A stretch of DNA of 63,986 nt, the filler included, from Octopus bimaculoides (taxonomy: Eukaryota), in NCBI RefSeq assembly GCF_001194135.2. It is 6 parts of 6 records of this genome, joined end to end, with 100 filler letters (N's around TTAATTAATTAA, not from the genome) between each part and the next. Parts side by side here need not be neighbours in the genome. Positions count along the whole stretch, not along the records: positions 61,008 to 62,849 come from NW_026299038.1; 5 more parts are not named here. One strand, 5' to 3'. The position numbers and the translations under genes are program-made. Position 1 is the first letter of the stretch; the number at the start of each line of letters is the position of its first letter. This document shows, piece by piece, positions 61,008 to 62,849 of this stretch. The notes under the pieces were generated by a model. The model was not told where the DNA came from. It ran no database searches and was given only the letters and a program-made list of their open reading frames with translations.

Positions 61008-62849
61008 CATGGCCTGAACGTACGTACGGCCGTTCGAGCCAAGAGCTACGGAACTTCGTCCGTTGCCCTTGGCTTGAAATTACGTACGCACGTTCGAGCC
61101 AAGTGCTACGGAACTTCGTCCGTTGACCTTAGCCTGAACGTACGTACGCCCGTACGAGCCAAGAGCTACGGAACTTCGTTCATTGCTCTTGGCCTGAACG
61201 TACGTACGCCCATTCGAGCCAAGAGCTAGGGACATTCGTCTGTTGCCCTTGGCCTGAACGTACGTACGGCCGTTCGAGCCAAGAGCTACGAAACTTCGTC
61301 CGTTGCCCCTTGCCTGAACATACGTACGCCCGTTCGAGCCAATAGCTACGGAACTTCGTCCGTTGCCCTTTGCCTGCATGTACGTACGCCCGTTCTAGCA
61401 AAGTGCTACGTAACATCGTCCGTTGCACTTGGCCTGAACGTGCGTACGCTCGTTCTGCCGGAGAGCTACGGAGCTTCATCCGTTGCTCTTGTTTTCAACG
61501 TCCGCTCGTTCTGCCGAAGAGCTACGGAGCTTCGTCCGTTGCTCTTGCCTCAACGTTCGCCCGTTGTGTCGAAGGGCTACGGAGCTTTTTCCGTTGCTCT
61601 TGCCTCAACGTACGACCATTCTGTCGACGAGAGACGGAGAGTCGTCCATTGCTCTTGCCTCAACGTACCCCCGTTCTGTCGTTGAGTTACGGAGCTTCGT
61701 CCGTAGCTCTTGCCTCAACGTCCGCCCGTTCTGTCGAAGTGCTACGGAGCTTCGTCCGTTGCTCTTTTCCTGAACGTACGTAGTCCCGTTCGAACCACGT
61801 GCTACGGAACTTCGTCCGTTGCCCTTGGCCTGAACGTACTTACGCCCGTTGGAGCCAAGAGCTACGGAACTTCGTCCGTTGCTCATGGCCTGAACGTACG
61901 TACGGCCGTTCGAGCCAAGAGCTACGGAACTTCGTCCGTTGCACTTGGCTTGAACTTACGTACGCACGTTCGAGCCAAGTGCTACGGAACTTCGTCCGTT
62001 GACCTTAGCCTGAACGTACGTACGTNNNNNNNNNNNNNNNNNNNNNNNNNNNNNNNNNNNNNNNNNNNNNNNNNNNNNNNNNNNNNNNNNNNNNNNNNNN
62101 NNNNNNNNNNNNNNNNNNNNNNNNNNNNNNNNNNNNNNNNNNNNNNNNNNNNNNNNNNNNNNNNNNNNNNNNNNNNNNNNNNNNNNNNNNNNNNNNNNNN
62201 NNNNNNNNNNNNNNNNNNNNNNNNNNNNNNNNNNNNNNNNNNNNNNNNNNNNNNNNNNNNNNNNNNNNNNNNNNNNNNNNNNNNNNNNNNNNNNNNNNNN
62301 NNNNNNNNNNNNNNNNNNNNNNNNNNNNNNNNNNNNNNNNNNNNNNNNNNNNNNACGTAGGCCCGTTCGAACCAAGTGCTACGGAACTTCGTCCGTTGCC
62401 CTTGGCCTGATCGTACGTACGCCCGTTCGAGCCAAGTGCTACGGAACTTCGTCCGTTGCCCTTGGCCTGAACGTACTTACGCCCGTTGGAGCCAAGAGCT
62501 ACGGAACTTCGTCCGTTGCTCATGGCCTGAACGTACGTACGGCCGTTCGAGCCAAGAGCTACGGAACTTCGTCCGTTGCACTTGGCTTGAACTTACGTAC
62601 GCACGTTCGAGCCAAGTGCTACGGAACTTCGTCCGTTGACCTTAGCCTGAACGTACGTACGTCCGTTCGGGCCAAGAGATACGGAACTTCGTCCTTTGCC
62701 CTTGGCCTCAACGTACGTACGCGCGTTAGAGCCAAGGGCTACGGAACTTCGTCCGTTGCCCTTGGCCTGAACGTACGTCCGCCCGTTCGAGCCAAGAGAT
62801 ACGGAACTTCGTCTGATGCCCTTGGCCTGAACGTACGTACGCCCGTCCA
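61008..62849. repeat. CpG-rich palindromic 60-bp satellite with an internal block of about 55-bp variant units
   Basis: Unit GGCCTGAACGTACGTACGCCCGTTCGAGCCAAGAGCTACGGAACTTCGTCCGTTGCCCTT; variant units at about 61440-61790; 329-bp gap inside. Confidence 0.97.

What the first reader, a model, noticed from the sequence alone, without database searches (positions are those of the whole stretch)
61008..62849. CpG-rich satellite in which every unit is a near-complete hairpin
Seen: each 60-mer folds as CGTTCGAGCCAAGAGC-T-ACGGA-(ACTTCG)-TCCGT-T-GCYCTTGGCYTGAACG, joined by a self-complementary ACGTACGT linker, so the array can extrude serial cruciforms in two registers. It is GC- and CpG-rich against an AT-rich background. 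I do not recognise it as a described satellite. Inference: candidate centromeric or subtelomeric, structure-based element, or template for a highly structured repeat RNA.
Basis: partly seen in the sequence, partly recalled or inferred. Interest (0 to 1): 0.75.

Follow-up and report, generated by a model that had tools for sequence, protein, structure and literature searches.

The report
Undescribed 60-bp palindromic satellite repeat
The piece is a real, non-coding tandem repeat whose 60-base unit is nearly its own mirror image, but nothing here shows that the hairpin shape is selected, so it is best read as an ordinary, undescribed satellite with unusually strong dyad symmetry.

Summary
All readable sequence in 61008-62849 is one head-to-tail array of 25 units. 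Twenty are 60-mers and five (61436-61711) are 55/56-mers. GC is 56-58 % and CpG observed/expected is 1.5.

The 60-mer consensus forms 18 Watson-Crick pairs plus one G·T out of 22, around a 6-nt loop. This is far beyond chance (DNA z -5.4, RNA z -5.9 and -6.9). The second register follows automatically.

Both sides of the gap carry the same family on the same strand. The phase as written is off by 37 nt. A 227-nt block is exactly repeated on both sides, so continuity cannot be established.

- paired columns vary as much as unpaired ones;
- compensatory change does not exceed the shuffles;
- no unit pairs better than the consensus;
- the 55-mer subfamily has lost the middle of the stem.

The array is not coding, matches no Rfam family or tRNA, and has no relative in any collection or paper searched.

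Best reading: a satellite whose dyad symmetry comes from a palindromic founder unit and is drifting. Blocks that recur at 98.6-100 % identity point to recent block amplification. Chromosomal location, copy number, transcription and host cannot be tested here.

The parts
61008..61435 (+). 60-mer block, units 1-7 (the first 8 nt are the tail of a preceding unit). Neighbouring units differ at about 6-11 of 60 positions.
61436..61711 (+). Short-unit subfamily: unit 8 (56 nt) and units 9-12 (55 nt). Its features are G instead of A at the first loop base, GCTCTT instead of GCCCTT (this repairs one A·C mismatch), CTGTCG instead of CGAGCC in the 5' arm, 1 nt lost from the 3' arm and 4 nt lost from the linker. 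The middle of the stem no longer pairs.
61712..61771 (+). Hybrid unit 13. The 5' part is of the short-unit type and the 3' end and length are of the 60-mer type. It marks the transition back to 60-mers.
61772..62025 (+). 60-mer block, units 14-17 plus the first 14 nt of the next unit. It runs into the gap.
62026..62354 (.). Assembly gap of 329 N. The array continues on both sides on the same strand. The phase as written is off by 37 nt, so the true length and content are unknown.
62355..62849 (+). 60-mer block, units 18-25 (8.2 copies, 88 % matches). The last 8 nt (CCCGTCCA) depart from the unit at the end of the piece.
61799..62025 (+). 227-nt block (units 15-17 and flanking bases) that recurs exactly at 62436-62662. 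It also recurs at 61008-61148 against 61884-62024 (141 nt, 2 mismatches, offset 876 nt = 15 units). This is higher-order or segmental structure within the array.
62436..62662 (+). Second exact copy of the 227-nt block.
61907..61956 (.). Example of one unit hairpin (unit 16). The 22-nt arm CGTTCGAGCCAAGAGCTACGGA, the loop ACTTCG and the 22-nt arm TCCGTTGCACTTGGCTTGAACT give 18 Watson-Crick pairs of 22.

Best explanation
This is a non-coding satellite: a head-to-tail tandem array with a 60-bp unit that is an imperfect inverted repeat (22-nt arm, 6-nt loop, 22-nt arm, about 10-nt partly self-complementary linker).

Shown:
- the array, its two length subfamilies and its strong dyad symmetry;
- blocks of 141-227 nt that recur at 98.6-100 % identity while neighbouring units differ by about 13 %;
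- the absence of any coding, RNA-family or covariation signal.

Inferred:
- The symmetry was inherited from a founder unit that was a nearly perfect GC-rich palindrome. Three of the four non-Watson-Crick positions in the consensus are each one transition away from a pair.
- The founder was copied by unequal exchange, replication slippage and block (higher-order) amplification, and the symmetry has since drifted without detectable purifying selection.
- Hairpin-prone units plausibly help their own amplification by stalling replication and promoting slippage or template switching. They also explain why the assembly breaks here.
- The retained CpGs point to a young or continually homogenised array, or to one that is unmethylated in the germ line.
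For: Array and units.

Dyad symmetry far above chance.

No selection on pairing. No unit has more than the consensus's 18 Watson-Crick pairs. The 55-mer subfamily lost the middle stem yet still made 5 local copies.

No strand-consistent wobble pattern. The + strand has one G·T and two A·C. The - strand has two G·U and one C·A. This argues against RNA-level maintenance on either strand.

Not coding:
- The 55/56-mers break every frame and the longest N-free ORF is 137 aa.
- Variant events fall 14/14/18 over the codon positions.
- There is no homologue among 5.8 billion proteins.
- Pfam gives only summed sub-threshold fragments on an artificial 3x consensus.

Not a known RNA: the best Rfam hit is 29 bits against a gathering score of 100, and there is no tRNA.

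Higher-order structure.

No CpG-decay signature: 5 CpG transitions among 46 events, with 0.94 events per CpG position against 0.70 per non-CpG position.

Not prokaryotic, viral or plasmid DNA.
Against: The covariation and conservation tests have little power: there are 14 distinct 60-mers, related by recent duplication.

The neutral simulation leans slightly towards preservation (227 pairs against 221, p about 0.1).

The inner hairpin plus loop (columns 25-45) is the most conserved part in both subfamilies, at 0.67 against 1.13 variants per column. That would also fit a protein-binding box or a structural core.

At pair 24/47, four different standard pairs occur (A-T, T-A, G-C, G·T).

Copy number, chromosomal position, transcription and the host species are all unknown. 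The piece has no flanks, so an origin inside a transposon or an rDNA spacer is not excluded.
Confidence: 0.58

Rival explanations
1. Structure-selected chromosomal element. The hairpin or cruciform is itself the functional feature, as in the model where dyad-symmetric centromeric satellites adopt non-B DNA that the CENP-A loading machinery recognises. The array would mark a centromere, or another heterochromatic landmark.
For: The dyad is much longer and more complete than the <10-bp dyads reported for centromeric satellites (PMC5889037). It covers 44 of 60 bases. A single strand of 240 nt folds at -67 kcal/mol, z -7.95. The inner stem and loop are the best-conserved part. The array shows blockwise higher-order identity like that of centromeric arrays.
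Against: There is no excess conservation or compensation at paired sites. A subfamily without the middle stem persists. Four of 22 positions in the consensus are not Watson-Crick paired (three mismatches and one G·T), which raises the cost of extrusion from duplex DNA (inference from general cruciform energetics). There is no location or chromatin evidence of any kind.
Confidence: 0.15
2. The array is the internal or derived tandem repeat of a mobile element (MITE, foldback or Helitron type), or a sub-repeat block of an rDNA intergenic spacer. The palindromic unit would descend from terminal inverted repeats or from a terminal hairpin.
For: Satellites often arise from TE inverted repeats, from internal TE arrays or by rolling-circle tandemisation of Helitrons with terminal hairpins (review PMC12628747). 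Only about 1.5 kb of array is seen. CpG-rich sub-repeats of about 60 bp are typical of rDNA spacers (general knowledge).
Against: There is no TE body, TIR, target-site duplication or rRNA within the piece. The whole piece, to both ends, is array, which is what a long collapsed satellite looks like in a short-read assembly. No relatives could be retrieved to look at flanks.
Confidence: 0.15
3. The array is a template for hairpin or double-stranded RNA. Transcripts of either strand fold on themselves or pair with each other, because the unit is about 70 % identical to its own reverse complement. They would feed siRNA or piRNA silencing, or yield miRNA-like products.
For: RNA folds are very stable on both strands (-28 and -33 kcal/mol per unit). 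The arms are 22 nt. Weak Rfam matches are all to miRNA precursor models.
Against: All Rfam matches are far below their gathering scores (29 against 100 bits at best). A 22-bp stem with a 6-nt loop is too short for canonical Drosha/Dicer substrates (general knowledge). There is no covariation and no strand-consistent wobble pattern. There is no expression evidence.
Confidence: 0.07
4. Coding repeat: 60 bp = 20 codons, and 4 of the 6 frames of the consensus are open.
For: Frames are open across several 60-mers. There is a summed Pfam YadA_head score of 32 bits on a 3x consensus.
Against: The 55/56-mers shift every frame and stops occur in all frames. Variation shows no codon-position bias. There is no homologue and no exact ORF on record. 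The Pfam score has no single passing stretch and is inflated by the artificial triplication. Open frames are expected in a GC-rich near-palindrome.
Confidence: 0.02
5. Contaminant or assembly artefact rather than host DNA.
For: The left contig begins and ends with the same 141 nt, and both gap flanks share 227 identical nt. This is the pattern of a walk through a collapsed repeat graph.
Against: The units are diverged and form graded subfamilies with transitional units, which is natural array structure. There is no match in prokaryotic genomes, viral contigs, metagenomes or plasmids. Collapse affects the order and number of units, not the existence of the repeat.
Confidence: 0.03

Closest known systems
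Dyad-symmetric centromeric satellites (Kasinathan & Henikoff 2018, PMC5889037)
   Same: Tandem satellite whose units contain inverted repeats enriched over composition-matched shuffles and predicted to form hairpins or cruciforms.
   Different: Those dyads are short (<10 bp) within units of about 170 bp or more, and were tied to CENP-A maps. Here one 22-bp dyad takes up nearly the whole 60-bp unit, and there is no centromere evidence at all.
Satellites derived from inverted-repeat transposons (MITE, foldback or Helitron-derived arrays; review PMC12628747)
   Same: Short unit dominated by an inverted repeat, with tandemisation and local subfamilies.
   Different: No TE termini, target-site duplications or element body are visible. 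No flank is available.
Higher-order-repeat satellites such as primate alpha satellite (general knowledge)
   Same: Neighbouring monomers differ by about 13 %, while multi-monomer blocks recur at 98.6-100 % identity.
   Different: The unit is 60 bp rather than 171 bp. The period (possibly 876 bp = 15 units) rests on one contig that may be a collapsed assembly path. The dyad symmetry is much stronger.
miRNA or hpRNA precursor hairpins (Rfam miRNA families)
   Same: 22-nt arms and a stable RNA hairpin on both strands.
   Different: Scores are far below every family threshold. The stem and loop are too short, there are no single-stranded flanks, and there is no covariation.

Membership tests
Satellite DNA (non-coding tandem repeat) | Head-to-tail copies of one monomer | tested here: met
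   25 units with period 60 (55/56 in five units). TRF scores are 1072 and 781.
Satellite DNA (non-coding tandem repeat) | Not protein-coding, not a known RNA gene | tested here: met
   Frames are broken by the 55-mers and there is no codon-position bias. There are no homologues, no Rfam family and no tRNA.
Satellite DNA (non-coding tandem repeat) | Long arrays or high copy number in the genome | not testable with these tools
   Only 1.5 kb of readable array on a piece without flanks. Read depth or long reads are needed.
Higher-order-repeat satellite | Multi-monomer blocks much more alike than adjacent monomers | tested here: inconclusive
   Blocks of 227 nt (100 %) and 141 nt (98.6 %) recur, against about 87 % identity between neighbours. 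The order of units may reflect assembly collapse.
Dyad-symmetric centromeric satellite | Dyad symmetry above composition-matched expectation | tested here: met
   z is -5.4 to -7.95. Reverse-complement identity is 42/60 against 27.1 +/- 2.3 in shuffles.
Dyad-symmetric centromeric satellite | Occupied by the centromeric histone, or located at the primary constriction | not testable with these tools
   No chromatin, FISH or chromosome-scale context.
Structured RNA with a conserved fold | Pairs kept through compensatory change; paired sites more constrained than unpaired | tested here: not met
   Covariation is at or below the shuffles. The RNAalifold covariation term is -0.03. Paired and unpaired columns are equally variable. 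The test has low power.
miRNA precursor | Match to a curated family, or canonical hairpin geometry | tested here: not met
   The best Rfam hit is 29.1 bits against a gathering score of 100. The stem is 22 bp with a 6-nt loop.
Coding 20-residue repeat protein | Continuous reading frame and homologues | tested here: not met
TE-derived tandem array or rDNA spacer sub-repeat | Flanked by element termini or by rRNA genes | not testable with these tools
   The piece is array from end to end. There is no rRNA hit inside it. No related loci could be retrieved.

The most novel reading that the evidence does not exclude
The 60-bp unit is a purpose-kept cruciform or hairpin module. On this reading it is a satellite in which almost the entire monomer is one 22-bp dyad that specifies a chromosomal landmark (for example the centromere of an animal group whose centromeric DNA is undescribed), or it drives its own silencing through self-complementary transcripts.
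Probability: 0.1. Interest if true: 0.65.

Novelty: new member of a known kind. Interest (0 to 1): 0.3.

Why it matters
If the repeat turns out to be abundant and centromeric, it would be an extreme natural test case for the idea that non-B DNA helps specify centromeres, because nearly the whole monomer is one dyad. It would also give a probe for chromosomes whose centromeric DNA is not described in the literature searched here.

As it stands, it is mainly a useful annotation. It is a satellite family to add to the host's repeat library, and it explains the assembly gap and the collapsed scaffold. The dyad symmetry by itself should not be read as evidence of function.

Tried and rejected
**Searches for relatives: nothing found**
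- Exact-pattern scans with the conserved core and with the linker plus 5' arm found nothing. These covered 185,579 prokaryotic genomes, IMG/VR and JGI metagenomes.
- blastn against plasmids gave no match.
- A four-frame consensus protein query against 5.8 billion proteins had 15 word-sharing candidates and none significant.
- Exact-ORF look-ups found no record.

**Literature: nothing found**
- No paper prints any of seven 13-16-mers of the unit. The only hit was a chance 13-mer in a Rhodococcus paper.
- No cephalopod or coleoid satellite or centromere description is in the held library.

**Known RNA families: rejected**
- Rfam at E up to 10 gave only generic hairpin matches to miRNA models, far below threshold.
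- ARAGORN found nothing.

**Coding reading: rejected**
- The YadA_head and other Pfam scores are artefacts of triplicating a short consensus.

**Simple contig overlap across the gap: rejected**
- The 227 identical nt are preceded by units that differ. Unit 14 matches unit 18 best, with an extra unit 19 on the right.

**Other checks**
- A 30-nt direct sub-period reported by TRF is weak: 24/60 identity at shift 30, the same as at shifts 26 and 34.
- No telomere motif is present.

Full report
**1. What is there**

The readable sequence of the piece is 61008-62025 and 62355-62849, and all of it is one tandem array. TRF reports period 60 with 17.3 copies (81 % matches) left of the gap and 8.2 copies (88 % matches) right of it.

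I anchored on the most conserved 22-mer, GCTACGGAACTTCGTCCGTTGC. This gives 25 units. Spacing is 60 nt throughout, except for one 56-nt and four 55-nt steps between 61465 and 61741. The array therefore contains a short-unit subfamily (units 8-12, 61436-61711) embedded between 60-mer blocks. Transitional units 7, 8 and 13 lie at its edges.

GC is 56.0 % and 57.8 % on the two sides. CpG observed/expected is 1.5, with eight CpGs per consensus unit.

**2. The gap (tested first, as asked)**

Both sides carry the same family on the same strand. Core-to-core spacing across the 329 N is 397 = 6x60+37, so the two sides are out of phase as written. A gap of 292 or 352 N would be in phase for 60-mers, and 55-mers in the gap would allow other lengths.

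The last 227 nt before the gap (61799-62025) recur without a mismatch at 62436-62662. This is not a plain contig overlap. Upstream of the identical block, the left side reads unit 14 then unit 15. The right side reads unit 18 (closest to unit 14), an extra unit 19, and then unit 20, which equals unit 15.

The left contig also starts and ends with the same 141 nt (61008-61148 against 61884-62024, 2 mismatches). The offset is 876 nt = 15 units.

Neighbouring units differ at about 8 of 60 positions, while these blocks are 98.6-100 % identical. That is the signature of higher-order or segmental amplification within the array. It could also be a walk through a collapsed repeat graph. Continuity across the gap cannot be established.

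**3. The hairpin**

The 60-mer consensus is TACGTACGCCCGTTCGAGCCAAGAGCTACGGAACTTCGTCCGTTGCCCTTGGCCTGAACG.

| Fold | Energy (kcal/mol) | z-score |
|---|---|---|
| Unit, DNA | -15.5 | -5.4 |
| Unit, + strand RNA | -28 | -5.9 |
| Unit, - strand RNA | -33 | -6.9 |
| Register centred on the linker, DNA | -15.3 | -4.0 |
| 240-nt single strand (one long nested hairpin), DNA | -67 | -7.95 |

None of 200 shuffles reached any of these values. The consensus matches its rotated reverse complement at 42/60 positions, against 27.1 +/- 2.3 (maximum 36) in 2000 shuffles.

The second register is an automatic property of tandem inverted-repeat units.

The claim that every unit folds this way is too strong. Individual 60-mers have 14-18 Watson-Crick pairs. 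The 55-mers keep only the inner 12-bp stem and four outer pairs (z -2.1).

**4. Is the structure maintained?**

- On the 24-unit alignment, 76.4 % of cells pair, against 77.0 % after shuffling partners.
- Three pairs show a change on both sides, against 3.7 expected.
- The covariation score is 0.044 against 0.060.
- RNAalifold keeps three pairs, with a covariation term of -0.03.
- Among 14 distinct 60-mers, paired columns carry 0.87 variants and unpaired columns 1.14 (Mann-Whitney p 0.84).
- I placed each unit's substitutions at random. This gives 221 +/- 4.2 total pairs, against 227 observed (p about 0.1).
- No unit pairs better than the consensus.
- The short-unit subfamily changed five positions of the 5' arm without compensation, yet still spread to five copies.

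Three of the four non-Watson-Crick positions in the consensus (A17·C54, A24·C47, G16·T55) are each one transition away from a pair. They do not become wobble pairs on one and the same strand. This fits decay from a once nearly perfect GC-rich palindrome better than RNA-level maintenance. That last step is inference.

There are caveats. Power is low, because the units are few and related by recent duplication. The inner stem plus loop (columns 25-45) is somewhat better conserved than the rest (0.67 against 1.13 variants per column). Pair 24/47 shows four standard pair types. The structural reading is unsupported, not excluded.

**5. What it is not**

*Not coding.* Four of six consensus frames are open, as expected for a GC-rich near-palindrome. 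However, the 55/56-mers shift every frame and the longest N-free ORF is 137 aa. Variant events fall 14/14/18 over the three codon positions. A query joining the four open frames found no relative among 5.8 billion proteins. Exact ORFs are not on record. The Pfam scores (YadA_head at 32 bits and others) have no single passing stretch, and arise from triplicating a 20-residue consensus.

*Not a known RNA.* The best Rfam match is 29 bits against a gathering score of 100. All matches are generic hairpin hits to miRNA models. There is no tRNA.

*Not prokaryotic, viral or plasmid DNA.* Two independent 21-23-nt patterns found nothing in GTDB genomes or JGI metagenomes, and the core pattern found nothing in IMG/VR. 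blastn against plasmids found nothing.

*No telomere motif*.

**6. Substitution pattern**

The 60-mers show 46 distinct changes, with transitions to transversions at 15:31. Only 5 are CpG-decay transitions. CpG positions carry 0.94 events against 0.70 for the others. Units retain 5-8 of 8 CpGs. There is no footprint of methylation-driven decay. This means either a young or continually homogenised array, or no germ-line methylation (inference).

**7. Best explanation and rivals**

The best explanation is a non-coding satellite whose monomer descends from a palindromic founder.
- It was amplified by unequal exchange, slippage and blockwise (higher-order) duplication.
- The dyad symmetry is inherited and drifting.
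- Hairpin-prone units plausibly favour slippage or template switching, and also cause the assembly break.

The rivals are not all mutually exclusive:
- a structure-selected landmark such as a dyad-type centromeric satellite (PMC5889037);
- an array derived from a MITE, foldback or Helitron element, or an rDNA spacer sub-repeat (PMC12628747);
- a template for self-complementary RNA;
- a coding repeat (rejected);
- a contaminant or artefact (unlikely).

None of the location, abundance, chromatin, methylation or expression tests can be run with these tools.

**8. Comparison with known kinds and novelty**

The array meets the definition of a satellite (tandem and non-coding). It meets the dyad-enrichment criterion of the Kasinathan-Henikoff class. 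The defining link to centromeric chromatin is untestable here.

It differs from that class in degree. A single 22-bp dyad occupies 44 of 60 bases, whereas that class has dyads of <10 bp.

No paper in the searchable library prints this sequence or describes a cephalopod or coleoid satellite. The library is incomplete, and neither nt nor Repbase/Dfam could be searched.

I rate it a new member of a known kind, of modest interest.

Noticed in passing
61008-61148 vs 61884-62024: The left contig begins and ends with the same 141 nt (2 mismatches) at an offset of 876 nt = 15 units (ten 60-mers, one 56-mer, four 55-mers). This could be a true 876-bp higher-order repeat, or one turn round a cycle in the assembly graph.
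   Followed up: partly
columns 27/44 of the unit, e.g. 61047 and 61064: A T·T mismatch in the middle of the stem is nearly invariant in both length subfamilies. It sits inside the best-conserved 21-nt core (GCTACGGA-loop-TCCGTTGC). The loop is as conserved as the stem, which would fit a sequence-specific binding box as well as a structure.
   Followed up: partly
whole array: The substitution spectrum among 60-mers is 15 transitions to 31 transversions, which is the ratio expected with no transition bias at all. CpG sites show no excess of decay. This is unusual for animal DNA, and might reflect consensus errors in a collapsed assembly.
   Followed up: no
whole array, - strand: The - strand RNA folds better than the + strand (-33 against -28 kcal/mol per unit), because two A·C mismatches become G·U. 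The third imperfect position behaves the opposite way, so there is no consistent strand signal.
   Followed up: yes
62701-62796 (-): The best Rfam match is mir-763 at E 0.0016 but only 29 bits against a gathering score of 100. It spans parts of two units and is a generic hairpin match.
   Followed up: yes
62842-62849: The last bases of the piece (CCCGTCCA) depart from the unit (CCCGTTCGA). This is probably contig-end noise.
   Followed up: no
+ strand frame RTPVRAKSYGTSSVALGLNV: The translated consensus contains SSVALG, which resembles the NSVAIG motif of YadA head repeats. Together with the triplicated query, this produces a spurious Pfam score above the family cut-off with no single passing stretch.
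   Followed up: yes
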